NCBI RefSeq assembly: GCF_963921235.1
Contig: NC_086100.1
Span: forward strand, 151,280,001 to 151,344,000
Direction: 5' to 3'
Source of the DNA: Mobula hypostoma
Lineage: Eukaryota
DNA: 64,000 nt
Shown piece after piece: positions 1 to 53,900 of this stretch (the first letter of the stretch is position 1; each line of letters begins with the position of its first letter). The position numbers and the translations under genes were made by a program. The notes under the pieces were generated by a model. It did not search any database. It saw nothing but the letters and a program-made list of their open reading frames with translations, and was not told the DNA's origin.

Positions 1-1445
1 CATAGCAAGGATAACTACAGAAAGAACCTGCATCTCTATAGCACCTTTCACAATCACAGGATGTGTGTTCTTTCTTTGCACAAATACTATGAAAATGTAT
101 CAAAATTAAATGAAACATGCAGCAAATTCCAACAAATAATGAAATAAATAAGCAAGTCATTAGTTTTAAATGTTGACAGGGAAATGGTGAAATCCACCCA
201 ATTTGCATAGTATCCACAAAATGTCAAGGCACAATGCAGAAAGAGCTTTGTATCTCAATCCTCGAACAGAAGGTGATGAACCTTTGAGAGCATATGCCCA
301 AATTGACAATCTTTTGAAAAATCCCCTCGTGTACCTTGGTAATTTTGAGCAGGGATTATTTAATGAATTAATAATTTTAGACTTTAAGGAACAAGGATGA
401 ACCTTGTTCCTTATTTATGTGGATTCATTGTCAACTGTTTGCTGGCACCAAGCTGATGAGACATTTCCTGTGAAAATGTCTCACTAGCTTTCAGGTTGTA
501 AAAAAATGATTCACTGCTTCATTTTGCAGAACAGGTTAATTGTTATATATTGTTTTATTATGAGTGATGTTTATAGAATCAAGGAGCAGCACTACTTTTG
601 ATGCACGCCATCTTGGGCATATAGGTTCACCAGCTCTGTCTTAGACGATGCGGGCTTCATAAGGACTTTTAAATCATGTATCAATACTGTGATTGAAGCC
701 TCAGCCTAGAACAAGAGGCAATCAAACCACATCTAATACCAAGAAATAGATGCGTTCTATAAGAAATGTGGTTGTTCTCTGAACATCACAGAGAGCTGAA
801 TGGTCCTGTTTGAGCAACGTACCATTCTAACACCAATCAGCAGCATACAGTACTTACAGATGCAACACTCCTCTAATATACTTCAGCCAAAACAAATGGA
901 AACAATATTTAAGTTCTTAAAGCATAAAGTATCACAAATAAGTTGAGCATCTAAAATTTTAATGAGCAATAAACCATAATGCAATTATTTACCACAATTA
1001 AAACATATCATCCAGTGTATTTAATATGATATCAAACTTTTGTGATTTGCACAAAAATACAGCATATCAAAACTATTCTTAAAAAACATTATAAATCCTT
1101 AAACTTAAGCCTTCTGGATTTGCCACTTAGAACAAAATTAAAACTAATTCTTTCACTTTAAATAAACAGCATAAACCTTCCTTTAAACTGCAAAAAAATA
1201 AGTTTACACAAACTTTCAGAAAACAGATTAAATGTTTCTACTAGGCTTTCATGAGTCATCAACAGGAGGTACATTGGATGGCAGATATTCTTTTCATTTT
1301 TCCTTCAAGATTTGAAGTTGCTTCCCATTGCATTTCTGCAGAATAACTTATTATATTTAGCAGCTTACTGGAAATGCAAGTCAAGATGAACACCCAATTC
1401 AGCAATTCTCCACAGAACTAAATTTTTAACCAGACTATACTTATA

Positions 1446-2059
1446 TTAAATGCTGCCATTTTCCTCTGGCTTTAGGAGGCTAGAGGATGCAAGAACCACC
1501 TGACATCCATTATTGAGATGATTCATTACTTTATGTTTGAGGTGTACCACTTGCTCACGTAAGACACTTGCTGTTGAGGTCAATTCAAAGTTCTCTGATT
1601 TTAGGGTCTTTACTTTATCTTCAAGTCTTGCAATTCTCTCTAACTTCCTTCTTCGACAATTTGATGCTGCAATGCGATTTCTCTGTCTCTTCTTTTCAGC
1701 TTTGATATGCTGTGCCCCATCTTCTAATGGGGAAAGTGGTGGAGATTCACTCATTGGGCCTACTTCTGGCACTGTCTGGGGCTCTTCTTGATACTTTGGA
1801 CACATAAACTGTGCCAAGGCTGAGAAGTGATGCTGTGCTGGTGCTGGGCCAGCATAGGGTACATGGCTAGTGGGATAACTTTCAGAACCTGCATTGAGCA
1901 GGCCTGAATTATAGTTGCCAAGGTTTGTATAGACAGGGAAATCTGCTTTCGACTGGGCTAAATGCAGACTTCCATGATAAACTGAAGTGGAGGAATGGGC
2001 TGGACATGGGGCTCCTGCCAGGACCAGGTGTTGGTTCTGTTTGGTCAAATCCTGCAATG
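1446..2059 (-). CDS. Jun/AP-1 family bZIP transcription factor (JunD-like, possibly june-type paralog), coding exon 2 of 2
   Basis: Encodes [10 protein letters not shown] (JunD ALEDLHKQNQ), [14 protein letters not shown] and the b[62 protein letters not shown]. Acceptor tttttctgtctttaaag ends at 2060; phase 1; stop TAA at 1448-1446. Confidence 0.95.
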
Positions 2060-2452
2060 CTTTAAAGACAGAAAAATTAAAGTTATCAGATTATTCACTA
2101 TAAGATATAGATACTTTAATGCTAGACATTCAGTCCACATGCCAACTTCTTCAAAAATCCATCCAATTAGTCTATAAGTTATCCTTTTATCCCAATAAAC
2201 TTAATTTAAAAAACTGGATTTGTGTACCCATTTATATTGAAGAGAACAAATTATAACCTTATAGGTCTGAGGTATGTGCCTCACAGCACCTAGGCACAGA
2301 ATCCCAAGATTCACAATTCCTTCTATTCAATAAGATAATCTCTATATACCACAAGAAAATCTATTAACTATTTTAAGCATTTTCATCTCAAATTTCTTTT
2401 CTGAAGACTGTTAAAGCATACTCCACATTTTATGTAATTATTATTCTGGTAA

Positions 2453-2705
2453 GACCCGGCTGGTGGCGTAGTGGCATCAGTGCCGGACTTCAGGATGAAA
2501 GGTCCCGAGTTCGAATCCAGCTGGCTCCCCTGCACGCTTTCCATCCGTGCTGGGTTACGAGCTCATGATCTCTTTGGAAACTCACCCGGCAGAAGGCAAT
2601 GGCAAACCACTGCTGTAACTTGCCTCATACGTGGTTCCCAGAGAGACATGGAGGGAAATAGTCCGCTAACCAGAGAAACTCCGGATGCGACGTATCTTTC
2701 CTTTT
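2453..2705 (+). mobile_element. tRNA-derived SINE with RTE-like body in the Jun intron
   Basis: Box A TGGCGTAGTGG, box B GAGTTCGAATCC, internal GAAGGCAATGGCAAACCAC motif, T-rich tail; 13-bp TSD TTATTATTCTGGT at 2438-2450 and 2706-2718. Confidence 0.85.
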
Positions 2706-3394
2706 TTATTATTCTGGTGAATATCCATTGCATTAGAACTAAATGCAATTGCTATACAATTTCAAGCTTTCATAATCCTATGACAGACATATTTCAACAT
2801 TTTATATACTGTTCACCAGTTTAGCAGCATCTTCACAAGGACCTCTAAAATACCCCAGCACTCTATGCTTCTCACAACATATTTTCTATATTTTTACTTC
2901 AGGTCCATACTGATGATCTCACACTGTCCAAAAGAATTCCATCCACCAGTCTCTTAATGCCATAGTAACTTAGCCATATCATCCTTACAACTCCCACATG
3001 TAATGTGGTCCCACTGGTCATTCAAATGCGTTATTAGTTATGAAGACTCACAATAAGGATGTGGATTTTCAATCTCATCTCTGCTTCCCAGCAAGAATCT
3101 TCTACCTGCAAATTGTAATACGTAAAATTTAGAAATCAAATCCATTAAGGTATTTGGGTGAAACTGCAAGTTTAAATTGAGAGAAAAGTACTGGTTAGAA
3201 ATGCAAAGGTGAGCAGCGAGGTGCAAAAATCGTTCTCACGTTCATCAACGCCTTAAATAGCAACTTCAAACTATCTCATGGTGGTCTGACCTGGTCAAGT
3301 ATAAGGAATACTTGGGTGATTATAAATAGAAATGAAATGAAATTTAAAGTGAAACTTTCGGAAGCCGGCGCAAAAGACGATACAACCGATATAA

Positions 3395-3490
3395 AGCAAC
3401 CCAAAATGCTGGAAGAACTCAGGTCAGGCATCATCTATGGAAAAGAGTAAACAGTCGACAATTCGGGCCGGGACCCTTCATCAGTTCTCC
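3395..3490 (-). mobile_element. Penelope-derived 3' end with degenerate hammerhead motif (Jun intron)
   Basis: Minus strand CTGATGAAGGGTCCCGGCCCGAATTGTCGACTG followed by the family tail ATAGATGATGCCTGACC...CCAGCATTTTG. Confidence 0.75.
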
Positions 3491-3967
3491 CCTTAATTTC
3501 CTATGCGTAACAAGGCAGAGAGTTTAAGTCTTTTGATAATGAGAGTCAACAGTACTACCCTAGGGGATAAAACATTAACAACGTTTATCTTGCCACAAAT
3601 GCTACCCGACCCGGGTGTTTCCAAAATGTTGTGTCCCATGCTCCTAACGCTGAACTGCCGCTTCGATCCACGCACCACTTTAAAGCACACCTGATGGACT
3701 CCCATGTGCAGCCAGCCTCAGTGGTCCTTTAAACCACACATGAAGCGATTATGCCGGGACGACTGGCAATGTAAAGCAGGCAGGGAGTGGGAACTACCGC
3801 AGAGTATGAGAGGAGCAGCAGTAGCAAACAGGCGATGGACATGTGAGCTGCAGTACTCCGAATTCCGACATGGGGCCCGTTCCTGAGCATCAGTCCACGA
3901 ATGCCTTCGACGTCCCAGGCCCAGTACCTAAACCTTCTCCATCCGCTGAGCCCGAAGCCGCTCTCAC

Positions 3968-4229
3968 CTTTCACAAGTGGATGGACAAGGCCCTCGGGCT
4001 CCCGCCTGGTAACGGGCCTGTCGGCCTGGGAAACGGATTCCGGCGAGGGCAGCGTGAGCAGAGCGGAATCAGAGCCGCCGCTGGTGCTGCCGCCGCCGCC
4101 ACCACCACCACCACCACCCGCCACCGCCTCCTGCGACTGCCGCCGATTCGTCGCACCTTTCTTGTCCATCGGCGCCGTCTCCAGGTGTCTGGAGCTCACC
4201 GTCTCGTCGCGATAAAAAGGAGCTGCCAT
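3968..4229 (-). CDS. Jun/AP-1 family transcription factor, coding exon 1 of 2
   Basis: MAAPFYRDE resembles JunD METPFYGDE; LLTLPSPE resembles LLKLASPE. Donor AAAG|gtgaga at 3968/3967. The 262 nt exon (phase 1) joins exon 2 in frame to rebuild LVKALQDL. Total 876 nt, 291 aa. Confidence 0.88.
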
Positions 4230-4270
4230 CTGAAGTCAGGAACTCGCTGCCAGTCCCGAACTTGGCGTGG

Positions 4271-4373
4271 CGTGACGCGACGCCGCTCGCTGACGCACTT
4301 CATTGCTCTTCTTAAGCTCTTAACGTCACAACGTCCCCATGGCAACCAGGCCCCCTCCCCCTCCCCCTCCCCC
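4271..4373 (-). promoter_or_regulatory. Proximal promoter of the Jun-like gene: CRE-like sites, RFX X-box, G-tract
   Basis: CpG-rich region. TGACGC half-sites near 4273 and 4291; TGACGTTA (-) at 4321-4328; GTCCCCATGGCAAC at 4333-4346; (GGGGGA)3GGGGG on - at 4351-4373. Confidence 0.7.
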
Positions 4374-4429
4374 AGTCTTCGTAATCCTGGACTGGGGAAA
4401 TTTGAATTGAGGTGGCGCACTTCGGGACC

Positions 4430-7093: not shown

Positions 7094-8113
7094 GGTTTAC
7101 AATATATATTAATGATTTGGATGAGGGATTTACAATATATATTAATGATTTGGATGAGAGAATTAAATGCAGCATCTCCAAGTTTGCGGATGACACGAAG
7201 CTGGGTGGCAGTGTTAGCTGTGAGGAGGATGCTAAGAGGATGCAGGGTGACTTGGATAGGTTAGGTGAGTGGACAAATTCATAGCAGATGCAATTTAATG
7301 TGGATAAATGTGAAGTTATCCACTTTGGTGGCAAAAATAGGAAAACAGGTTATTATCTGAATGGTGGCCGATTAGGAAAAGGGGAGGTGCAACGAGACCT
7401 GGGTGTCATTATACACCAGTCATTGAAAGTGGGCATGCAGGTACAGCAGGCGGTGAAAAAGGCGAATGGTATGCTAGCATTTATAGCGAGAGGATTCGAG
7501 TACAGGAGCAGGGAGGTACTACTGCAGTTGTACAAGGCCTTGGTGAGACCACACCTGGAGTATTGTGTGCAGTTTTGGTCCCCTAATCTGAGGAAAGACA
7601 TCCTTGCCATAGAGGGAGTACAAAAAAGGTCCACCAGATTGATTCCTGGGATGGCAGGACTTTCATATGATGAAAGACTGGATGAACTAGGCTTATACTC
7701 GTTGGAATTTAGAAGATTGAGGAGGGATCTGATTGAAACGTATAAAATTCTAAAGGGATTGGACAGGCTAGATGCAGGAAGATTGTTCCCGATGTTGGGG
7801 AAGTCCAGAACGAGGGGTCACAGTTTGAGGATTAAGGGGAAGCCTTTTAGGACCGAGATTAGGAAAAACTTCTTCACACAGAGAGTGGTGAATCTGTGGA
7901 ATTCTCTGCCACAGGAAACAGTTGAGGCCAGTTCATTGGCTATATTTAAGAGGGAGTTAGATATGGCCCTTGTGGCTAAAGGGATCAGAGGGTATGGAGG
8001 GAAGGGTGGTACAGGGTTCTGAGTTGGATGATCAGCCATGATCATACTGAATGGCGGTGCAGGCTCAAAGGGCCGAATGGCCTACTCCTGCACCTATTTT
8101 CTATGTTTCTATG
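7094..8113 (+). mobile_element. 5'-truncated CR1 LINE (RT C-terminus and 3' UTR)
   Basis: ORFs 6925..7284 (YINDLD, KFADDTKLGG) and 7288..8022 (LVRPHLEYCVQFWSP, FFTQRVVNLWNSLP); (TTTCTATG)n tail. Confidence 0.92.
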
Positions 8114-22937: not shown

Positions 22938-25900
22938 GTAAGACCTTAAGATGTAGGAGCAGAAGTAGGCCATTTGGCCCATTGAGTCTGCTCTGCAATT
23001 CAATCATGGGCTGATCCAATTCTTCTAGTCATCCCCATTCCCCTGCTTTCACCCCATACCCTTTGATGCCCTGGCTAATCAAGAATCTATCTATCTCTTC
23101 CTTAAATACACCCAATGACTTGGCCTCCACAGCCGCTCGTGGCAACAAATTCCACAGGTTTACCACCCTCTGACTAAAGTAATATCTCCGCATCTCTGTT
23201 CTAAACAGACGTCCTTCAATCCTGAACTCAAGCCTTCTTGTCCTAGAGTCCCCTACCATGGGAAATAACTTTGCCATATCTAATCTGTTAAGGCCTTTTA
23301 ACATTCAGAATGTTCCTATGAGATCCCCCCTCATTCTCCTGAACTCCAGGGAACGAAGCCCAGGAGCGGCCAGACATTCCTCATATGGTAACCCTTTCAT
23401 TCCTGGAATCATTCTCGTGAATCTTCTTTGAACCCTCTCCAATGTCAGTATATCCTTTTTAAAATAAGGAGCCCAAAACTGCACACAATACTCCAAGTGT
23501 GGTCTCACAAGTGCCTTACAGAGCCTCAAAATCACATCCCTGCTCTTATATTCAATACCTCTAGAAATGAATGCCAACATTGCATTTGCCTTCTTCACAA
23601 CCAACTCAACCTGCAGGTTAACCTTTAGGGTATAGAAACATAGAACAATAGAAACTACAGCACAGAAACAGGCCTTTTGGCCCTTCTTGGCTGTGCCGAA
23701 CCATTTTCTGCCGAGTCCCACTGACCTGCACACGGACCATATCCCTCCATACACCTCCCATCCATGTATCTGTCCAATTTATTCTTAAATGTTAAAAAAG
23801 AACCTGCATTTACCACTTTGTCTGGCAGCTCATTCCATACTCCCACTTCTCTCTGTGTGAAGAAGCCCCCCCTAATGCTCCCTTTAAACTTTTCCCCCCT
23901 CACCCTTAACCCATGTCCTCTGGTTTTTTTCTTCCCTTGCCTCAGTGGAAAAAGCCCGCTTGCATTCACTCTATCTATACCTATCATAATTTTATATACC
24001 TCTATCAAATTTCCCCTCATTCTTCTATGCTCCAGGGAATAAAGTCCTAACATATTCAACCTTTCTCTGTAACTGAGTTTCTCAAGTCCCGGCAACATCC
24101 TTGTAAACCTTCTCTGCACTCTTTCAACCTTATTTATATCCTTCCTGTAATTTGGTGACCAAAACTGAACACAATACTCCAGATTCAGCCTCACCAATGC
24201 CTTATACAACCTCATCATGACATTCCAGCTCTTATACTCAATACTTTGATTAATAAAGTCAATGTACCAAAAGCTCTCTTTACAACCCTATCTACCTGTG
24301 ACGACACTTTTAGGGAATTTTGTATCTGTATTCCCAGATCCCTCTGTTCCACTGCACCCCTCAGTGCCCTACCATTAACCCTGTATGTTCTACCTTGGCT
24401 AGTCCTTCCAACGTGCAATACCTCACACTTGTCTGTATTAATCTCCATCTGCCATTTTTCCAGCTGGTCCAAGTCCCTCTGCAGGCTCTGAAAATCTTCC
24501 TCACTGTCTACTACACCTCCAGTCTTTGTATCATCAGCAAATTTGCTGATCCAATTTACCACATTATCACCCAGATCATTGATATAGATGACAAATAACA
24601 ATGGACCCAGCACTGATCCCTGTGGCACACCACTAGTCACAGGCCTCCACTCGGAGAAGCAATTCTCTACTACCACTCTTTGGCTTCTTCCATTGAGCCA
24701 ATGTCTAATCCAATTTACCACCTCTCCATCTATACCTAGCGACTGAATTTTCCTAACTAACCTCCCATGCGGGACCTTGTCAAAGGCCTTACTGAAGTCC
24801 ATGTAGACAATATCCACTGCCTTCCCTTCATCCACTTTCCTGGTAACCTCCTCGAAAAACTCCAATAGATTGGTCAAACATGACCTACCACACACAAACC
24901 CATGTTGACTCTCCCTAATAAGTCCCTGTCTATCCAAATACTTGTAGATTCTGTCTCTTAGTACTCCCTCCAATAACTTACCTACTACCGACCTTAAACT
25001 TACTGGCCTATAATTTCCCGGATTACTTTTCAATCCCTTTTTAAACAACGGAACAACATGAGCCACTCTCCAATCCTCTGGCATCTCACCTGTAGACAGC
25101 GACATTTTAAATATTTCTGCCAGGGCCACTGCAATTTCAACACTAGTTTCCTTCAAGGTCCGAGGGAACACCCTGTCAGGTCCCGGGGATTTATCCACTT
25201 TAATTTTCCTCAAGACAGCAAGGACCTCCTCCTTTTCGATCTGTACAGTTTCCATGATCTCACTACTTGTTTCCCTTAATTCCATAGACTTCATGCCAGT
25301 TTCCTTAGTAAATACAGATGCAAAAAACCTATTTAAGATCTCCCCCATTTCCTTTGGTTCCGCACATAGCTGACCACTCTGATCTTCAAGAGGACCAATT
25401 TTATCCCTTACAATCCTTTTGCTCTTAATATACCTGTAAAAGCTCTTTGGATTATCCTTCACTTTGACTGCCAAGGCAACCTCATGTCTTCTTTTAGCCC
25501 TCCTGATTTCTTTCTTAAGTATTTTCTTGCACTTCTTATACTCCTCAAGCACCTGATTTACTCCCTGCTTCCTATACATGTCATACAACTCCCTCTTCTT
25601 CTTTATCAGAGTTGCAATATCCCTTGAGAACCAAGGTTCCTTATTCCTATTCACTTTGCCTTTAATCCTGACAGGAACATACAAATTCTGCACTCTCAAA
25701 ATTTCTCCTTTGAAGGCTTCCCACCTACCAAACACATCCTTGCCAGAGAACAACCTGTCCCAATCCACGTTTTTTAGATCATTTCTCATTTCTTCGAATT
25801 TGGCCTTCTTCCAGTTAAGAACCTCAACCCTAGGACCAGATCTATCCTTGTCCATGATCAAATTGAAACTAATGTTGTTATGATCACTGGAACCAAAGTG

Positions 25901-28119
25901 CTCCCCTACACAGACTTCTATCACTTGTCCGAACTCGTTTCCTAACAGGAGATCCAATATTGCATCCCCTCCAGTTGGTCCCTCTATATATTGATTTAGA
26001 AAACTTTCCTGAGCACATTTTACAAACTCTAAACCATCTAGACCCCTAACAGTATGGGAGACCCAATCAATATATGGAAAATTAAAATCCCCTACCACCA
26101 CAACTTTATGTTTCCTGCAGTTGCCTGCTATCTCTCTGCAGTTTTGCTCTTCCAATTCTCGTTGACTATTAGGTGGTCTGTAATACAATCCCACTAATGT
26201 GGCCATACCTTTCCTGTTTCTCAGCTCCACCCACAAGGACTCAGTAGACAAGCCCTCTAATCTGTCTGGCCTGAGCACTGCTGTAATATTTTCCCTAACA
26301 AGCAATGCCACTCCCCCACCTTTCATTCCTCTGCCTCGATCACATCTGAAACATCGGAACCCTGGAATATTAAGCTGCCAGTCCTGCCCCTCCCGTAGCC
26401 AAGTTTCACTAATCGCTACAACGTCATAATTCCATGTCTCAATCCACGCCCTCAACTCATCCGCCTTACCCACAATACTCCAAGCATTGAAATATATACA
26501 CCTCAGAATATTGCACAAGGACTCCCAAGTCTCTCTGCATCTTTCCATTTTGAATTCTCTCCCCATCTAAATAATAGTCTCCCTGTTTATTTCTTCCACC
26601 AAAGTGCATGACCATACATTTTCCAACATTGTATTTCATTTGCCATTTCTTTGTCCATTCCCCTAAACTATCTAAGTCTCTCTGTAGGCTCTCTGTTCCC
26701 TCAATACTACCACTCCTCCACCTATCTTTGTATCATTGGCAAATTTAGCCACAAATACATTAATACCGTAGTCCAAATCATTGACATACATCGTGAAAAG
26801 CAGCGGTCCCAACACCAACCCCTGTGGGTCTCCACTGGTTACCAGCAGCCAGCCAGAATAGGATCCCTTTATTCCCACTCTTTGTTTTCTGCCGACCAGC
26901 CAATGTTCCACCCATGCTAGTAACTTCCCTGTAATCCCACAGGTTCTTATCTTGCTAACCAGCCTCATGTATGGCACCTTATCAAAGGCCTTCTGAAAAT
27001 CCAAGTACATCACATCTACTGTATCTCCTTTGTCTACCCTGCTTGTAATTTCCTCAAAGAATTGCAGTAGGTTTGTCAGGCAGGATTTTCCTTTCAGGAA
27101 ACCATGCTGGCTTTAGCCTATCTAGACATGGGCCTCCAGGTACTCCGTAATCTCATCCCTAACAATTGATTCCAACAACTTCCCAACCACAGATGTCAGG
27201 CTAACAGGTCTATAGTTTCCTTTCTTCTGCCTCTCACCCTTCTTAAATAGCGGAGTAACATTTGCAATTTTCCAGTCATCCAGTACAATGCCAGAATTTA
27301 TCAATTCTTGAAAGATCTTTGTTAATGCCTATGCAATCTCTCCAGCTACTTCCTTCAGAACCCGAGGGTGCATTCCATCAGGTCCAGGAGATTTATCCAC
27401 CCTCAGACCATTAAGCTTCCTGAGCACCTTCTCAGTTGTAATTTTCACAGCACAAACTTCACTTCCCTGACACTCTTGAATGTCCAGTATACTGCAGATG
27501 TCTTCCACTGTGAAGACTGATGCAAAATACGCATTCAGTTCCTCTGCCATCTCTCATTACAATATCTCCAGCATCATTTTGTATTGGTCCTATATTTACC
27601 CTCAACTCTCTTTTACCCTTTTTATACTTAAAAAAGCTTTTAGTATCTTCTTTGATATTAGTCATAATTCATCTTTTCCTTCAGAATGACCTTTTTAATT
27701 AACTTCGGCAAGTTTTTAAAAGCTCACCAATCCTCTAACTTCCCACTACCTATGGCTTCCTTGTATGCCCTCTCTTTTGCTTTTACTTTGGCTCTGACTT
27801 CACTTGTCAGCCACGGTAGTGTCCTTCTTCTCTTTGAAAATTTCTTCTTATTTGGAATATATCTGTCTTGCACTTCCCTCATTTTTCACAGAAACTCTAG
27901 CCATTGCTGCTCTGCTGTCCTTCCTGCAAATGTCCCTTTCCAGTCAACCTCAGCCAGTTACCCTCTCATGCCATTGTAATTTCCTTAATTCCATTGAAAT
28001 ACCCACACATTGGATTTTAATTTTTCCCTCTTAAATTTCAACGTGAACTCGATCATATTGTGATCACTGTTCCCTAAGGGTTCCATAACTTTCTCTCTTA
28101 TCACCTCCGGATGATTACA
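22938..28119 (-). mobile_element. CR1 LINE (host copy), split by a second LINE
   Basis: ORF2 fragments 27459-27665, 27329-27550, 27122-27304, 26672-27013, 23305-23630 and 23029-23304; 3' UTR near 22940. Confidence 0.9.
23633..26508 (-). mobile_element. Near-intact CR1-clade LINE ORF2 (APE endonuclease + RT), one frameshift
   Basis: ORF 24215..26566 with ISETWL, GDFNFP, SDHN, PQGSVLGP and FADD, continuing in 23655..24218; short-repeat tail at 23633-23655. Confidence 0.93.
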
Positions 28120-41455: not shown

Positions 41456-41493
41456 TAATAAACATCATAACTTATAAATAACCTAAGAGTTAC

Positions 41494-41695
41494 CTTTGAC
41501 TGCTGATTTGATCGAGTAAAACAGAATATGGATGGCACAGCATTTTCTTCCAGTATTTTATTGTTACAGTTCTTTCTGAAACAGTCCAATGTGAAATGTT
41601 CTGAACACAAATTGCTGTTTTTAGTGGGTATAAAATTCCGTCTTCTTACTGCATCCAGCCACTTTTTGCAGAGCTCCGGCCGCTTCAGGGGAAAC
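41494..41695 (-). CDS. THAP1: THAP1-like protein, exon 2 (rest of the THAP C2CH zinc finger)
   Basis: [67 protein letters not shown]; acceptor AG 41697-41696; donor AAG|gtaact; 202 nt. Confidence 0.93.
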
Positions 41696-43419
41696 CTTCA
41701 ATTGGGTTTTAAAAATACTGTTAGAGAGAAGACCCATATATTGATAGCTATCAATAAAATTGGTTACTTACAATTGGTTTTTCACCATCCTTCCAAGCAC
41801 ACAGCTGGTCTCCTGAATATAAATTGCAGCCAAAAGAAACCAAACAATGTAAGTATATACAAAACAATGTCTACTCCATTCTTTAGTGTATCATACTCAG
41901 TTAATGATTCAGGATCATTGATATTTGCAGGCCACTGTAGTGATGTCAGACACACATAACTGCATGAAGTGTCCCAATCTCCAAATTTACCTGTATTGTC
42001 CAAACTGGTCATCACAGCTATTTAATTCAGCCGTGCGTTTTTAGCCAAAGCTGCAGTAATTTTACTGCTCTTCTGTGGCCATGCAACTCATTTATTCCTC
42101 CTTACGTCCAGTTGGCTTTGGCTCAACATTGTAATCGAGGCAAAAAGCAATTAAGATCATGGCTTTAAACCCCTTTCAGTATAACTAAATTCTTTCACAC
42201 CCAATCAAATATTTTTAAAGTGTAATAATAATGTTAAGAAATACAACAGCTAATTTGCATAAATCCAAGTTCCACACATGACAGTAATGCACAATCTGTA
42301 TCATTATTGATATTAGTTGAAGTATCAGCCAAGGTCTGGTCCTTTTTGGATAGCACATAGCCTTTCTCACATCCAAATGAAAAATCCCATAGTTTCAAAT
42401 CTCAGTATATTGTCTCATCAAAAAATTAAAATGTTGATAGCACAATTCATACTCAGTACAACATGATATCAGCCTAGATTAGAACTTGATTGAATAGTCA
42501 TCTTAATCACATGAGAACGCTACCCTAGCCATCACCACTACTTCATGGATAAAATAGCAAAAGGACAAGGTCAAAAGTGAAAAGAAGGACATTTCCACTT
42601 TTAGCTTTATTTAAAAATATATTTAAATGCCAGACCATCATATTTTGTGGAAAGAAAATCCAGTAACATTTCAGGTCAAATCAGTTCTGACAAAGGGTCT
42701 TTGACCTGAAACATTAACTGTTTCTCAGAGATGCAGCCTGACCTGCAGATGTTAAAAAAACATAAGAAATAACGTGATTTCTATCATCCACAGCTTATTT
42801 TTTGACTTTCACATATTTGTAGTTTTATTAGACCAGTCTACCATTGATTTCACTATGTATGTTTTCTAAGTCCTATTCACACATTACCAATAAAGCCGGA
42901 TTTAGGAATTCATGGAACCTTTAATACATGAAGTTTATCCAGCACCACTTTGCCCATTAACGTAGATTATCACAGGCCTATCACTCTGTGCCAACACAGC
43001 TATCACAATTGCAAAGATTCACTGCAAAATATAGCAAGAAAGTCCATGACCACAGCCAAAAGGAAAACAGTATTTTAAAACATTAGAATGCTGGATAAAA
43101 ATGCTGCAAATAGAAAACTACAGTAAGATTTTAGAAACTCACTACTTCAAGCACGCTTTCCATCATGATTATTCGCTACACTTATTTTTTTTATTACAAT
43201 TCTCTATCGGGTACGCTGTGAAATCAACCCCTCACTCCATCACAACTAACCCTAAAGTGATTTACCAACTCCGCCTCACATACATACTTCCGGATCATCC
43301 CCTTCAGTCACTTGCCCTGCTTATCCCTCTACTCTGGAGACCCTTTCAGCTTCAACCCTCCTGCCAAATTTCTTTCCCTGCCCAACGTCAGTAGCTTTCC
43401 CACCTCACCACCAACATCC

Positions 43420-43780
43420 CGCCTTGTTCAACTTCCTTTCTGACGCCATTCAAGGAGTGGCCTGGCTAGTCAGCCAGCAAGCCAGCCCGCGCCAAGATCT
43501 CAGCTCACCGGCCACGTTCTGCCACGCAGAGCCACAACCAATACACTCCCTGATGGAAGCCGCCACCCAGAGCCTACCTGTGGAAAGAAACGCCACGGTC
43601 TTTATCATACCGATTCTTGCAGCCGTAAGCAGAGCAGGATAACACCATGGCGCCGAGCAGTCTCCGGGCACCGACCGCGCCTACCTGACCCTGTTCACGG
43701 CTCTCATTGGCTGGGTCTGCCAGCAGCCGCCGTTTCTGCTATACTGTCGGTGATGTCACTGATGGTGCTGGGGCGATCTG
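43420..43780 (-). promoter_or_regulatory. CpG-rich promoter and first exon region of the THAP1-like gene
   Basis: Local CpG enrichment; CCAAT (-) at about 43706-43710; TGATGTCA near 43751. Confidence 0.6.
43578..43648 (-). CDS. THAP1: THAP1-like protein, exon 1
   Basis: Kozak GCGCCATGG; [23 protein letters not shown](R); 71 coding nt then gtaggc, the same length as human THAP1 coding exon 1. Confidence 0.93.
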
Positions 43781-47934: not shown

Positions 47935-50900
47935 AGTGGTTTCCTGAAAGGAAAATCCTGTCTGACAAACCTACTGCAATTTTTTGAGGAAATTACAAGG
48001 CGAGTTGGCAAAGGAGATGCAGTAGACATGGTGTACTTAGATTTTCAGAAGACCTTTGACAAGGTGCCGCACTTGAGGCTGCATAGCAAGATAAGAGCCC
48101 ATGGAATTACAGGGGAGTCACTAGCATTGGTGGAGCATTGGCTGGTCGGCAGAAAACAGTGAGTGGGAATAAAGGGATCCTATTCTGGCTGGCTGCCTGT
48201 TACCAGTGGAGTTCCACAGGAGTTGGTGTTGGGGCCGCTGATTTACAATGTATATTAATGATTTATGGAATTAATGGATTTGTGGCTAAATTTGCAGATG
48301 ATACAAAGACAGTTGGAGGAGCTGTTGTGTTGAGGAAACAGAGAGACTTAGTTTAGTGGAATGGGCAAAGAAGTGGCAAATGAAATACAATGTTGGAAAA
48401 TGTATGTGTAACTCTCACTTTGACTAGGGGACTAATATAGGGGGTGATAGCCCCCGGCCCGGCCAAACTTAAAGAAAGCTTGTTTGGGTGGATGCGGTGT
48501 GATGTGTCCCTTGTTACAAATCAGTACCCTGAAATAACGAACAGTGCACAATATGAGATTAAATGATTAAGCTTTATAATTCTTACTTTGACCATATGGT
48601 TAGTAAAGAAATGAAAAAAGGGCCCAATCTTATTAAACAGTCTGTTGCACAATGTTAGAGCTCACTGTTAAGTCAATCGTCAATCGTCCACCATCGACCT
48701 CCTCCGATTGTCACTTCCCTTCGGACTCTCGCTCCAAGTCCACCCTGTCCAGCGGTCTACCAACTCTCTCCATTCACGTCTTCTCTCCTCATCTCTCCCC
48801 GGCAAAAGACCGCGAAAATCTCTCTGCCAGCTCACAAGGAAGAACAATAGAATTCCAAACCCCGTTATCTCCAGTCATAACCCAAACATTGCTGCTACAG
48901 AGAAACTATCACATTATCAGTGAAACCTTACAGCATGTTATACAGCAGTGAAACCGTACAGCATGTTACACTCTCCCCCCAACCAAATTTAGTCATATCC
49001 TCATGACACTGAGATAATTCTCCAACCCTTCCTGCAAAACACAAAGCCCAGTCCAGGTGTAAAAAGCAGTGACATAGCTCCCCGGCACAGTAGGGGTCAC
49101 ATTCTGTTCCCCTGGTGCTATGTAGGCCAACCTATCCAGTGGTCTCCTAATTCTCTGAGACCTCTGCACCCCATCATCTAACATTTCAGGTTTTGACACT
49201 ACTGGGGATACTGGGTTTACCTGGCGAGGTCTCCTCCAATCTATCACTCGTGCCCACCTGCAATTTGGAGCCCTCTGTTCTGTGATCAAACCCCACTTCC
49301 TCCCCTGCAGAGTCCCGCTGCAACCCAGGCTGCCCACAGATGCACCCCCCTCACCTGTCTCAATGGGAGAAGGGCCGGGAGTCTCTTCCTCAATCAATGG
49401 GGAGTTAGCGAAAGGCAGCGTATACCACACATCCAGGTCCTCATCCTCCGAATCAGTATCCCTCTCGGGGTGGCGGGGGTGGGGGGGTGCGGCTTGACCT
49501 CGCCTGTTGGGAGCTCAGTAGTCACCCGACGTTTCCGCAGAGTCCTCTTACTAGGTGTAGGCTCCAAGTTGGGCTCTGGGTCTACCTGTACCTCTTGACC
49601 CAGGGGCCACAGGTTATTCCAATGGAGAACCTTGACAGGCTCATTCCCATTCTCTGGTTTCACCGGGAAAACTGGTAGGTTTGGCATCTGACTCTCCACC
49701 ACATAGGGCGTAGCCACCCAACGGTCAGCAACTTATGCTTTCCAGATAGCCCCAAATTCCTTATGTGGACTGTCTCCTGGCAGAAGTTGGGAGAACCTCA
49801 CCTTTTGATCATACCTCCTCTTATTCCCTTAATTCTGCTGGGCAGCCGTGACCCCAGCTAATTCATAAGCCCTTTTCTACTCTCTTCTCATGTCAGACAC
49901 ATACTTCAGATAAGTCTTCAGTGGTAAGTCACCCTCGTCAGTCCCAAAACAAAGGTCAATGGGCAACCTCGCCTCATGCCCAAATATCAGATAATTTGGT
50001 GATTACCCAGTAGCTTCATTTCGTGTACAATTATAACTGTGAAACAGATGCCCAATATGTTGACTCCACCTGCTCTTCTTGCTGATCTGCAGGGTCCTGA
50101 GCACGTATAGCAAGTCTGGTTAAACGTCTCTGGCTGGGGATCACTCTGCGGGTGATAGGGCATGGTCCTTGACTTCTCGACGCCAAGCATGCCCAGTAAC
50201 TCATGGATGAGTCTGCTCTCGAAATCCTGTCTCTGATCGCTATGTATTCGCCTGGGAAGGCCATAATAATTGAAATACTTCTCCCATAACACCTTTGCAA
50301 CCATAGACACCCTCTGGTCCTTGGTAGGAAAAGCCTGAGCATATCTGGTGTAGTGGTCCGTGATGACTAAGACATTTGCTGTGTTGCTGGCATAGGGTTC
50401 TATGGACAGGAAATCCACACACACCAGGACCAGAGGCCCTGCACTCTGCAAGTGTGACAAAGAAGCTGCCCACATAGGCAGTGTCTTCCATGGTATACAT
50501 CGAATGCATGAATTGCAGTATTCTTCGACCTCCGACTTCATTCGGAGCCAGTAAAACCAGTCTCTGAGCAGATCCATAGGTCTTTTCCACCCCCAAGTGT
50601 CCAGAATCATCATGAAGTGACTTCCAACGCAATCCTCCAATACTTCTCGGGCAGAACCAGCTGGCAACGCTGGGGTCGGTTTGGGGGTGATGTGATCCGG
50701 TATAAGATTTGATTCTTCAACTCCAACCAAGGCCATTCTCATAGTAATGGAGGCAGCGACATGTTTTTCATCCTCTCCACCTAAGCTATGTCTCCTTTTT
50801 CGACTGCTGCCCAAATGGTACCAATGCCTGGATCGTTGCGCTGAGCAGCAGCCACTTCCCCAGAACTCAATCCCGGCAGCTAATTGGTCTTCAGAGCAGT

Positions 50901-53900
50901 CAGGTTACACTAAACTTGGGTGATGGTGTCATCAGAGGCCCCCAATTGATCCACCACTTGCTCCTGCCCCTCCTTTTCCTCTGCCTTCACGGTGATGGCA
51001 AACTGACACAGGGCCTTCACCCCCGGGGCAGGAACGCTCTCCCACTCCTCGTCCCTAACCAGTCCCTTGTGCGCCCGTTGGGACAAAGCATCAACGTCAA
51101 TGTTCCAGCTTCCCGGCCGGTACTTCAGGCTGAAGTCATAGGCAGACAACGCCGCCAATCATTGATGGCCTGTGGCATCCAATTTCGCCGATGTCAGGAT
51201 ATAAGTTTGGGGGGTTGTTGTCTGTCCTCACCTCAAACTTGGTCCCATAGAGGTAGTCACTCAGCTTATCCACCACTGCCCATTTCAACGGCAGAACTTC
51301 CAACTTGTGTGTGGGATAGTTTTTCTCGGAGGGCGACAAACTCCAGCTGCTAAACACAACTGCCCTCAACCCAGAGCCCTGATCTTGATACAGGATGCCC
51401 CCTAAACCCTCTCGGCTGGCATCCATGTGCAGTACATACGGTAATCGGGTGTCTGCAAAAGCCAGCACTGCTGCCTGGGCCTGCAGCTCCTTCAGTGACT
51501 GAAAGGCCTTCTCACATTTCGCATCCCACCTCGGTCCAAAGGGCCCCGACAGGCTAAGATACTCTCCACCCCCCTGTCCTTTTATCCCGCTCCCTTTCTT
51601 CCCCAAGGGAGGGTAACCACACAGAAGCCGATTCAAAGGGTGGTTCACTTTCGTGTAGCATTTCACAAACTTCCAATAGTAACCACAAAACCCGAGGAAT
51701 GAGTACAGAGCACTCACAGTCTGGGGTCTTGGCCAAGTGGTAATGGCCTTGATCTTAGCTGGATCTGTAGCTACCCCATCTGTGACACTGTGTGCCCAAC
51801 ATAGCTAACAGACATTTGACAGAACTGGCAATAGTCCAGGGAGAGTTTTAACCCTTCAGCTTTCAGGCAGCCCAGCACCTTCAGCACCTTCGCTTCATGT
51901 TCTTCCAAGGTGAATCCAAATACTATGAGGTCATCCAGATGTACCAATACCTCAAGCAAGTTCATATCCTCCACCGTCTTCTCCATGGCCCACTGGAAGA
52001 TTTCAGGAGCTCCTGAGATGCCCTGGGGCATCCTTTCCAACTGGAAAAATCCTGGGGGCATATAAATGCCGTTTTCTCTTTGTTGGCCTCACTCATGGGG
52101 ATCTGGTAATATCCACTCCTCAAGTCCAGCAACCTGAACCACTTGGCAGCACTCAGGCATGCCAGCACGTCTTCAGTCCTCGGGACGGGGATGGTGCGCC
52201 TGTTCAGAGTCCTGTAGTCCACACGCATCTGTACTTTCCCATTCTTCTTTCGGGCCACTACTTTTGGGGATGCATAGGGGCTTCCGGATTCAGTGATGAT
52301 CCCAGTTCCCTTCAACTTACACAAATGCTGCCAAACGTCCTCCATCTCTGCAGGGGCCAGTCGCCGTGGCCTTTCTCTGAACGGGGTATCCTCAGTCACC
52401 CGGATAGTGTGACATGTGCTCTTTGAACAACCCACATCAAACTCGTCAGTGGAAAAGACACCTTCCAGCTTCAACATCTTCTCCACCAATCTCCTCTTCC
52501 AACCCACAGGAACTGGGGAGTCCCCGAAGCTGAATGACTCAGCGGTCAACTTTCCCCCCTCTTCCAATAGTTTCTCCCCGGGGTGTCTCGCCGGGGCACT
52601 AGACATCACCGTCACCAGGAAGAAAAGCGCCGGGGCATCCCCCGCTTGAAGGTGACCTCCCCCTTTGTAGTGTTCCTGACAATCACTGCCATCCCACTTG
52701 CCTGTACAACTGAGGGCCTCTGCAATTGGGGCCTCACCAGTACCCCAGCAGGAAATCCTGACTGCCCCTCGTGGTCTTCTGGAGAGTCCACTAAGAGGGC
52801 TTCGCGCTCAGGCACTCCAGAAAATTTGGGGGTCCCCATCACTCTCGCTACTTCCCCGGGCCATACCACCATTGGCTTCAACTGGGTGAACTTTACAGTC
52901 CCTTGTCTAAATTCGGTATCTGGCCCAATGCTGCCATGCACTTCCTCAAAAGCAGCTCGAAACCCCGGGAGCACGGACAATGTCCCCAGAAAGCTCTCGC
53001 CAGTCTTCTCCTTGCAGGCCACCATGAGTCTCCTCACAAGAGGGGTGTTGGTCCCCACCGGAATTGAAACGCTGCCCTTCTCCGGGTCCAGACAAACCAG
53101 CACCAGTGTATCAAGGACCTCAGACACTCCCACATCGGCCTCTGAGAACTCCAACTTCACTGACAAATAACCGTCGTATGGATAATCACTAGCATTAAGC
53201 CCCCAGATCTCCAGTGCCCTGAATGGTGTCATTGGCAAATGCTTCAGATACCGGTTGTAAAACAAATGGTACAACAACATGACCTGTGACCTGGTGTTGA
53301 GTATGGCTTTAGCATAAATACCCTCTATTCGTAGCGACAGACTGGAGCATGGACCCAATAAGCCTTCAGGAGTTGGGCCTTTCACTTTCGGGAGTTCCTT
53401 GGTACATTGCTGGGAATGTGTTCCCCCAGAGACACCAGGCCTTTCCCTCACTGGGTCTCCTCTAGATTTTCCCAATGACTCCCCCTGCTGAGGTACCCGG
53501 GGGCTCACTCTCCTTCTGGTGTGACACCTGCTGCCAGCTGATGTTGTGAGAGCTGTCAGGTTGAAATATCCGGTAGCGACAGCTGTCAATTATTGTTCGT
53601 CCCTTTGGGGAATCCACTGCCCCATCAGCTCTATCACATGGGGGGGGGTCACACCCGCTGATAATAGCCAACATATCTCCATTCTCAACTCTGCCACAAT
53701 CTCCTCTACTGCTCCCCCGGGGTAGGCTATCTGTGGTCACTTCACCACAGGAGACTACTGCTGAGGACTGTACCTTGCTGACGGAGTCCTCCCGCACCTC
53801 TGCCGCATTCTCCTCTTCCTGTACCTCTCTGATCAACTCAACAAAAGATGGAGGGGGGCACGTCTTACGAGACTGTCAGAGACCCCAAGCAATCAGGTCA

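What the first reader, a model, noticed from the sequence alone, without database searches (positions are those of the whole stretch)
1446..4229. Intron-containing Jun gene: candidate relic parent lineage of the intronless vertebrate Jun genes
Seen: a 1.9-kb GT-AG phase-1 intron (3967-2060) splits the conserved VK-A-LxDL helix, and the joined ORF is an intact 291-aa Jun. Established: mammalian JUN, JUNB and JUND are intronless and lie on 1p32 and 19p13, not near POLR2B (4q12). Inference: this is a separate Jun lineage lost in mammals. It may correspond to the teleost june/fjun-type gene (recalled, not verified), and may be the intron-bearing source locus from which the intronless Jun ancestor was retroposed.
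Basis: partly seen in the sequence, partly recalled or inferred. Interest (0 to 1): 0.8.

Follow-up and report, generated by a model that had tools for sequence, protein, structure and literature searches.

The report
Ray JunE gene with gained introns
This is a stingray's copy of JunE, the already named fourth Jun gene that mammals lack, and its introns are most likely a cartilaginous-fish addition rather than a relic of the ancestral Jun gene.

Summary

**Gene model.** RNA contigs from four runs splice exon 1 (4229..3968) to a 54-nt micro-exon (3105..3052), then to the last exon (2059..1446). That gives two GT-AG phase-1 introns and a 309-aa protein.

**Identity.** The ray also has single-ORF c-Jun, JunB and JunD, so this is a fourth paralogue. 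It groups (96/94) with teleost 'junE proto-oncogene' and with unnamed orthologues in sturgeon, amphibians, turtle, tuatara and ratites. It lies beside THAP1, as in emu and turtle, with RNF170 and a HOOK gene nearby. So it is chondrichthyan JunE (june), already reported to have no apparent mouse orthologue.

**Introns.** The coding sequence is uninterrupted in every other Jun gene checked:
- bony-vertebrate JunE (five species);
- the ray's own three paralogues;
- a lamprey Jun;
- two invertebrate Juns.

Amphioxus Jun has one intron, at a different site and phase. The ray's insertion sits seamlessly inside one Ala codon of the conserved FVK-AL motif. Chimaera, sharks and rays share the structure. 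The introns were therefore most likely gained in the chondrichthyan stem.

Interest is moderate: a known paralogue carrying a clean, ancient intron gain and a conserved micro-exon.

The parts
3968..4229 (-). Coding part of exon 1 (ATG at 4229). It encodes residues 1-87 plus the first base of codon 88. It contains a degenerate copy (LLTLPSPES) of the LLKLASPELE phospho-acceptor motif. The exon ends AAAG|GT, phase 1.
   Evidence: Sequence and translation. RNA contigs reach 4250-4260 and join 3968 to 3105 in four runs.
4156..4157 (-). Alternative donor inside exon 1 (AAAG|GTGCGA; exon ends at 4157). Joined to the micro-exon it stays in frame (phase 1) and removes 63 aa (4156..3968).
   Evidence: Joint 3103/3105->4155/4157 in run X1 at depth 46. 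Sequence.
3106..3967 (-). Intron 1, 862 nt, GT..AG, phase 1. It holds an abundant repeat at about 3380-3483.
   Evidence: Joint 3105->3968 in four runs. Intronic contigs have depth of only 3-17 outside the repeats.
3052..3105 (-). 54-nt micro-exon, phase 1-1, encoding GRRFLLGSRDEIENPHPY(S). It is inserted between FVK and ALxDL of the conserved activation-domain motif.
   Evidence: Coordinates. Both flanking joints appear in all four runs. The insert is identical in the Hemitrygon protein and conserved in other sharks and rays. Callorhinchus has a 63-nt counterpart. Single copy in this genome.
2060..3051 (-). Intron 2, 992 nt, GT..AG, phase 1. It holds an abundant repeat at about 2450-2700.
   Evidence: Joint 2059->3052 in four runs at depths 129, 140, 15 and 55.
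1446..2059 (-). Coding part of the last exon: the C-terminal half of the Jun domain, the basic region ([17 protein letters not shown]), the leucine zipper, a JunE-type C-terminal tail ([13 protein letters not shown]) and the stop at 1448..1446. The 3'UTR runs on past 1300 and beyond the window start.
   Evidence: Pfam Jun and bZIP_1 hits. Contigs of 2.6-2.8 kb continue beyond 1300. 73.9% nucleotide identity to the Callorhinchus last exon.
4273..4328 (-). Putative promoter core with three CRE half-sites (TGACG/CGTCA) at 4328-4324, 4295-4291 and 4277-4273, just upstream of where the RNA contigs end. This is an inference only.
   Evidence: Read from the sequence. Contig ends at 4250-4260. No functional test.
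41491..43648 (-). Context: exons 1-2 of the THAP1 orthologue (43648..43577 and 41697..41491), upstream of JunE on the same strand.
   Evidence: tblastn with the THAP part of P0011 gives 100% and 96% identity. NCBI names that part THAP1 in sharks.

Best explanation
The locus is the stingray orthologue of JunE (teleost june). JunE is the fourth gnathostome member of the Jun bZIP family, kept in cartilaginous fishes, ray-finned fishes, amphibians, turtles, tuatara and at least ratite birds, and absent from mammals.

It is transcribed and spliced from three coding exons into a 309-aa protein. That protein has an intact Jun-type basic region and leucine zipper. By inference it dimerises with Fos/ATF partners and binds TRE/CRE sites.

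The two introns are derived, not ancestral. DNA was inserted inside the Ala codon of the conserved FVK-A-L motif (AAA G^CA) of an intronless JunE gene in the chondrichthyan stem lineage. The insert became spliced out, and 54-63 nt of it was retained or later exonised as a symmetric micro-exon. In the sampled RNA this micro-exon is included.

Inclusion puts 18 residues into the activation-domain motif; skipping would restore the canonical motif. An internal donor in exon 1 can also remove 63 N-terminal residues. Splicing therefore probably tunes the transactivation half and leaves the DNA-binding half unchanged.

Shown: the splicing pattern, the paralogue count, the tree placement, the shared neighbours, and the uninterrupted CDS in the other Jun genes checked. 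Inferred: the direction (gain), its timing, DNA binding and dimerisation, and any regulatory role of the micro-exon.
For: Splicing:
- Joints 3968-3105 and 3052-2059 occur in four runs from three studies. Exon depth is 15-140 against 3-17 in the introns.

Fourth paralogue:
- The genome search finds four Jun loci. Three have full-length single ORFs that read as c-Jun, JunB and JunD, and they fall in clades holding source-named Jun, JunB and JunD proteins.

Orthology to JunE:
- The profile search gives only two 50%-identity clusters for the chondrichthyan protein.
- Its sister clade has support 99 in FastTree and 96/94 in IQ-TREE.
- That clade holds 'junE proto-oncogene' of Lampris and Myripristis, plus sturgeon, salmon, frog, salamander, turtle, tuatara and ratite proteins.
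- All of these share a C-terminal tail beyond GCQ that Jun, JunB and JunD lack.
- THAP1 lies next to the gene in ray, chimaera, emu and turtle.
- An RNF170-like exon lies 4 kb downstream in the ray, and an RNF170-like gene lies downstream in chimaera.
- A HOOK gene lies about 105 kb away. c-Jun and JunB also share chromosomes with HOOK genes.

Intron gain:
- The CDS length equals the gene span in sturgeon (1041 nt), Lampris (1080), Pleurodeles (1236) and emu (1242). The turtle gene span (1193 nt) is 2 nt longer than its 396-codon CDS, and NCBI flags that model as low quality.
- The same holds for a lamprey Jun (1413 nt) and two invertebrate Juns.
- Amphioxus has one 209-nt phase-0 intron, 53 codons upstream of the motif.
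- The codon alignment shows a seamless insertion inside one codon.
- Callorhinchus has the same three-exon structure.
Against: - AU tests do not formally reject the chondrichthyan clade grouping with JunD (p = 0.06) or lying outside all other vertebrate Juns (p = 0.14). Orthology therefore rests on the ML support plus synteny and the shared tail.
- Gain versus loss is a parsimony argument. A gain in the gnathostome stem followed by one loss in the osteichthyan stem needs only one more event.
- No trace of the inserted element survives: the introns do not align between ray and chimaera, and the micro-exon is single copy. The mechanism of gain is therefore unknown.
- The outgroup sample is small. 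Two of the invertebrate genes come from unnamed assemblies.
- The run type 'RNA' is a guess by the tool. It is supported here only by the spliced joints and the exon/intron depth contrast.
Confidence: 0.76

Rival explanations
1. The intron is ancestral and this locus is the surviving intron-bearing parent. The intronless Jun genes arose from it by retroposition, or each lost the intron independently.
For: - It is the only Jun lineage found with introns at this site.
- The AU test does not reject a position outside all other vertebrate Juns (p = 0.14).
- Amphioxus Jun does have an intron, so the pre-vertebrate gene need not have been intronless.
Against: - Osteichthyan JunE at the same THAP1-linked locus is uninterrupted, so even the orthologue lacks the intron.
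- A lamprey Jun and two invertebrate Juns are uninterrupted.
- The amphioxus intron is at another site and in another phase.
- The ML tree nests the gene with JunE at 96/94.
- c-Jun, JunB and this gene each share a chromosome with a HOOK paralogue, as expected from duplication of regions and not from retrocopies.
- This reading needs at least three or four independent precise losses, against one gain.
Confidence: 0.06
2. The intron was gained in JunE before the chondrichthyan-osteichthyan split, after the duplications that made JunE. It was then lost once in the osteichthyan stem by recombination with a cDNA.
For: - It needs only one event more than the stem-chondrichthyan gain.
- Precise intron loss is a known process in expressed genes (established knowledge).
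- All osteichthyan JunE genes checked lack it uniformly.
Against: - It is less parsimonious.
- No osteichthyan checked keeps any trace of the intron or the micro-exon.
Confidence: 0.1
3. The main product is the 291-aa micro-exon-less protein proposed by the reader, and the micro-exon is a minor or non-functional inclusion.
For: - Skipping restores the canonical VK-A-LQDL motif exactly.
- A skip isoform is annotated in Pristiophorus (P0005).
Against: - All four runs carry the inclusion joints at the depth of the flanking exons, and none shows the skip joint.
- The annotated primary models of the other sharks, rays and chimaera listed include the micro-exon.
- Its peptide is conserved across sharks and rays, and the GR.F.L start is shared with chimaera.
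- Its length is a multiple of three in both lineages, 54 and 63 nt.
Confidence: 0.08

Closest known systems
[quoted passage not shown]
   Same: - Same orthology group by tree (96/94).
- Same neighbour, THAP1, in emu and turtle.
- Same C-terminal tail after GCQ.
- Same Jun plus bZIP_1 domain content.
   Different: - The chondrichthyan gene has two introns and a micro-exon, where bony-vertebrate JunE has one uninterrupted ORF.
- It has a shortened N-terminal half with no recognisable JNK-docking stretch.
- Its basic region reads ASNCRRR, against ASKCRKR in actinopterygian and amphibian JunE and ASKCRRR in turtle, tuatara and bird JunE.
- It sits on a long stem branch (0.51).
- THAP1 is head-to-tail with it rather than head-to-head.
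JunD
   Same: - It is the best-scoring non-chondrichthyan hit by plain similarity, at about 50-53% identity.
- Callorhinchus JunE is even labelled 'jun-D' by NCBI.
   Different: - The ray has its own JunD on another chromosome (L003, 293 aa, single ORF).
- That JunD groups with named JunD proteins, so this gene is not JunD.
c-Jun (JUN)
   Same: - Same family architecture: an N-terminal PFY.DE start, an S-P phospho-acceptor remnant, the FVKAL motif, the basic region and five zipper heptads.
- Presumably the same TRE/CRE binding as a dimer (inference).
   Different: - c-Jun is intronless.
- c-Jun has the delta/JNK-docking region and the TTTPTP stretch, both missing here.
- The ray's c-Jun is a separate gene (L004).

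Membership tests
Jun family of bZIP transcription factors | Pfam Jun domain (PF03957) followed by bZIP_1 (PF00170) | tested here: met
   The last exon scores 44.4 bits against Jun (cut-off 26.7) and 62.2 bits against bZIP_1 (cut-off 27.6).
Jun family of bZIP transcription factors | Jun-type basic region (N-x2-AA-x2-CR) and leucine heptads | tested here: met
   [13 protein letters not shown] is followed by L-x6-L heptads and is invariant across 12 chondrichthyan orthologues. AF2 predicts one confident helix over residues 216-294 of the Hemitrygon orthologue. DNA binding itself was not tested.
Jun family of bZIP transcription factors | N-terminal activation region with a JNK-docking (delta) stretch and LLKLASPELE phospho-acceptor sites | tested here: inconclusive
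   Exon 1 has no Pfam hit. The alignment shows only LLTLPSPES in the ray and FLRLASPELHRL in chimaera. No K-x-x-K-x-x-x-LNL-like docking stretch is seen.
JunE (june) orthology group | Groups with named junE proteins to the exclusion of Jun, JunB and JunD | tested here: met
   Support is 99 in FastTree and 96/94 in IQ-TREE. The AU test of the alternatives is not decisive (p = 0.06 and 0.14).
JunE (june) orthology group | Same genomic neighbourhood as JunE of other vertebrates | tested here: met
   THAP1 is adjacent in ray, chimaera, emu and turtle. Lampris junE lies beside an FKTN-like gene instead. No neighbour gene was seen within 10 kb in sturgeon.
JunE (june) orthology group | A full complement of the other three paralogues in the same genome | tested here: met
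   c-Jun (L004), JunB (L002) and JunD (L003) are present as single ORFs.
   There is no intron at the FVK-AL codon in amphioxus (its intron lies elsewhere, phase 0), a lamprey Jun, two invertebrate Juns or osteichthyan JunE.

The most novel reading that the evidence does not exclude
A spliceosomal intron was gained de novo, more than about 400 million years ago, inside the most conserved activation-domain motif of an otherwise intronless immediate-early gene family. Part of it then became a conserved, constitutively included micro-exon. Cartilaginous fishes would thereby have a splice-tunable Jun protein that no other vertebrate has. The new acceptors may also allow read-through THAP1-JunE fusion transcripts, which are annotated in catshark only.
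Probability: 0.55. Interest if true: 0.5.

Novelty: new variant of a known kind. Interest (0 to 1): 0.38.

Why it matters
- Well-supported intron gains in vertebrates are rare (my recollection of the field, not checked here). This one has a clear before-and-after state: a seamless insertion inside one codon, with four paralogue groups and several outgroups uninterrupted at that codon. It also has a datable window, the chondrichthyan stem.
- The same event created a conserved micro-exon in a transcription-factor activation motif. Assays of the protein with and without the exon could test what that motif does.
- The result also corrects annotation. The 'Jun-like', 'AP-1-like' and 'jun-D' labels in sharks, rays and chimaera should read JunE. 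The human THAP1-RNF170 interval is the place where mammals lost it.
- It does not bear on how the Jun family became intronless.

Tried and rejected
- **Pfam on exon 1:** no family hit.
- **Literature:** searches for retroposition or intronless origin of Jun genes, and for JunE evolution, found nothing on gene structure. They only showed that june is used as a zebrafish and eel gene symbol and appears to lack a mouse orthologue.
- **AU tests:** tests of the alternative placements were inconclusive.
- **Origin of the insert:** the micro-exon with its flanks is single copy in the genome. Ray and chimaera introns do not align; only the last exon does. No donor element could therefore be named.
- **Intron repeats:** ARAGORN and Rfam found nothing in the introns.
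- **Structure:** AlphaFold2 on the Hemitrygon orthologue gave confidence only for the bZIP helix (mean pLDDT 54). It says nothing about how the micro-exon affects the motif.
- **THAP1-JunE fusion as a conserved product:** a search with the THAP part of the catshark isoform found normal THAP1 proteins in many species, but no second fusion.
- **JunD orthologue or recent duplicate:** rejected, because the genome has its own JunD and the gene is shared by chimaera, sharks and rays.
- **Skip junction and THAP1 junction in ray RNA:** not tested further.
Full report
**1. What is in the sequence**

On the minus strand an ATG at 4229 opens a G+C-rich exon (66% G+C). It ends AAAG|GTGAGA, with the last exon base at 3968.

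An AT-rich acceptor, tttaaag|CATTGCAG, starts a 614-nt exon at 2059 that runs to a stop at 1448..1446.

The last exon scores above the Pfam cut-offs for Jun (PF03957) and bZIP_1. Exon 1 alone hits no family.

**2. The gene model has three coding exons, not two**

The first protein search returned orthologues from rays, sharks and a chimaera. Hemitrygon akajei was 97% identical over the last exon, so the window comes from a closely related stingray.

All but one of these orthologues carry 18-21 extra residues, such as GRRFLLGSRDEIENPHPYS, exactly between VK and LQDL. The 54-nt exon has an acceptor ttgcag|GT and a donor TATT|GTGAGT, and is phase 1 on both sides.

I laid the contigs of four RNA-like runs from three studies on 1300-4400.
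- All four runs have the joints 2059->3052 and 3105->3968, both GT..AG on the minus strand.
- These joints lie at the depth of the flanking exons (129/140/15/55 and 110/86/15/44). Intronic contigs outside the repeats reach only 3-17.
- No contig joins 2059 to 3968.
- One 2840-nt contig runs 4250..3966, then the micro-exon, then 2059..1300 and on into a long 3'UTR.

The expressed product is therefore 309 aa.

Run X1 also joins the micro-exon to an internal donor of exon 1 (AAAG|GTGCGA, exon ending at 4157). This stays in frame and removes 63 residues. A micro-exon-skipping form is annotated only in Pristiophorus (P0005).

**3. It is a fourth Jun paralogue**

A six-frame search of the window's own 3.48-Gb assembly finds four Jun loci. 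The other three are full-length single ORFs that read as c-Jun (318 aa), JunB (318 aa ORF from TTG, 313 aa from the first ATG) and JunD (293 aa). In the tree each sits in a clade holding proteins that their sources name Jun, JunB or JunD.

**4. Which paralogue it is**

A profile of 12 chondrichthyan orthologues was searched against 1.84 billion cluster representatives. It found only two clusters for the chondrichthyan protein itself, then a drop from 455 to 232 bits.

In a FastTree of 136 rows the chondrichthyan clade is sister, with support 99, to a clade of 16 representatives. Ten of the 16 were looked up:
- 'AP-1-like' or 'Jun-like' proteins of sturgeons, paddlefish and sockeye salmon;
- proteins of two frogs and a salamander;
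- proteins of a turtle, the tuatara, and kiwi, cassowary and emu.

A careful IQ-TREE run (48 rows, 290 columns, LG+C20) recovers this grouping with 96/94 support. Inside it the branching follows the species tree. Each of the four groups holds one ray gene.

AU tests do not formally reject the two alternatives: the clade grouping with JunD (p = 0.06) or lying outside all other vertebrate Juns (p = 0.14). I therefore looked for independent evidence.

*Shared tail.* The chondrichthyan proteins and bony-vertebrate JunE share a C-terminal extension beyond GCQ. Examples are ...[13 protein letters not shown] in the ray and ...STATLAKSGESASC in sturgeon. Jun, JunB and JunD lack it.

*Shared neighbours.*
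- In the window, THAP1 exons 1-2 lie at 43648..43577 and 41697..41491, upstream on the same strand. NCBI names the matching shark protein THAP1.
- An RNF170-like DUF1232 exon lies about 4 kb downstream of the stop codon (2.8 kb outside the window).
- A HOOK gene lies about 105 kb away.
- POLR2B lies about 92 kb away on the other side.
- Callorhinchus has the order THAP gene, Jun gene, RING+DUF1232 gene.
- In emu and turtle a THAP gene 65% identical to the ray's THAP1 exons lies head-to-head 4.5-7 kb from JunE.

From memory, human THAP1, RNF170 and HOOK3 are adjacent on 8p11.21, HOOK1 lies near JUN on 1p32, and HOOK2 lies beside JUNB on 19p13.13. In the ray, c-Jun and a HOOK gene lie 1 Mb apart on C50. 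JunB and another HOOK gene share C81, 11 Mb apart. This pattern fits duplication of whole regions.

[quoted passage not shown] An eel study lists 'june, JunE proto-oncogene' (PMC12733183). The separate lineage lost in mammals is therefore real, but already named.

**5. Are the introns ancestral?**

| Gene | Coding sequence |
|---|---|
| JunE, sturgeon | uninterrupted, 1041 nt |
| JunE, Lampris | uninterrupted, 1080 nt |
| JunE, Pleurodeles | uninterrupted, 1236 nt |
| JunE, emu | uninterrupted, 1242 nt |
| JunE, turtle | gene span 1193 nt, 2 nt longer than the 396-codon CDS (model flagged low quality) |
| Jun, lamprey | uninterrupted, 1413 nt |
| Jun, two invertebrates on 0.75-0.9 Mb contigs | uninterrupted, Met to stop |
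| Jun, amphioxus | one 209-nt phase-0 intron between ...KKPHLQ and NILGTPELNLLKL |

The amphioxus intron lies 53 codons upstream of its GFVAAL motif, so it is a different site and phase.

The motif [FY]A.GFV.AL is contiguous from invertebrates to vertebrates. In a codon alignment the ray reads GTG AAA G^CA TTG CAG GAT TTG, against sturgeon GTG AAA GCC CTG GCA GAT CTC. The whole 1908-nt block therefore sits seamlessly inside one Ala codon.

Callorhinchus has the same two intron positions and a 63-nt micro-exon. The structure therefore predates the holocephalan-elasmobranch split.

One gain in the chondrichthyan stem explains all of this. An ancestral intron would need precise independent losses in Jun, JunB, JunD, osteichthyan JunE and the cyclostome gene.

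How the insert arose cannot be recovered. The micro-exon region is single copy, and the introns do not align between ray and chimaera.

**6. How it probably works**

The basic region and zipper are invariant across chondrichthyans. They form the only confidently predicted structure, a helix over residues 216-294 of the Hemitrygon orthologue. I infer AP-1-type dimerisation and TRE/CRE binding.

The N-terminal half is shortened. It has no recognisable JNK-docking stretch and only a remnant of the Ser-Pro acceptor motif.

The micro-exon splits the FVK-AL motif, and its peptide is conserved. Skipping it, or using the internal donor of exon 1, would change only the activation half. This points to splice-level tuning of transactivation, but that is an inference with no test behind it.

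Three CRE half-sites lie just upstream of the contig ends. They suggest, and no more than suggest, an inducible promoter.

**7. Verdict**

The gene and both splice sites are real, but the middle exon was missed.
This is a distinct lineage, namely june, and mammals lack it. It is not a relic intron-bearing parent.
- What remains new is a clean, ancient intron gain with a conserved micro-exon in a known but little-studied paralogue.
- Interest is moderate (0.38).

Noticed in passing
window 41491-43648 (minus); P0011: THAP1 exons 1-2 lie upstream of JunE on the same strand. Catshark isoform X2 (P0011) fuses THAP1 exons 1-2 to the JunE micro-exon read in another frame, then to the last exon from an acceptor 8 nt downstream. 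In the ray that frame of the micro-exon is open (VEDSCWEAEMRLKIHILI) and the matching acceptor ttgcag|GATTTG exists at 2052/2051. No second species has such a fusion annotated.
   Followed up: partly
L009 1-5538 and L011 1-3194, compared with window and L005: THAP1 is head-to-head with JunE in emu and turtle, but head-to-tail in ray and chimaera. This implies a local inversion in one of the two lineages.
   Followed up: no
window about 2450-2700 and about 3380-3483: Two interspersed repeats lie inside the JunE introns, with very high contig depth in the RNA runs (up to about 4e4). The first looks tRNA-derived by eye, but ARAGORN and Rfam report nothing.
   Followed up: partly
window 4273-4370 (minus): Three CRE half-sites (TGACG/CGTCA) and a (GGGGGA)n run lie just upstream of where the RNA contigs end (4250-4260). 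This may be an inducible promoter core.
   Followed up: no
window 4156-4157 (minus): An internal alternative donor in exon 1 is used in run X1. It stays in frame and removes 63 residues of the N-terminal half.
   Followed up: partly
L010 3373-3581: Amphioxus Jun has a 209-nt phase-0 intron just before the LLKLGSPELERL motif. The NCBI 384-aa model adds 63 N-terminal residues compared with the cDNA-derived 321-aa protein.
   Followed up: partly
window 7288-8022, 23305-26566, 49987-53589 and others: The rest of the window is mostly retroelement ORFs: a LINE endonuclease/reverse-transcriptase ORF of 783 aa, and LTR-type integrase, RT and protease fragments.
   Followed up: no
P0013, P0053: Two database labels are misleading. 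Callorhinchus JunE is named 'jun-D'. A ray-like JunB protein is filed in UniRef under the bacterium Kangiella spongicola, which is probably contamination.
   Followed up: no
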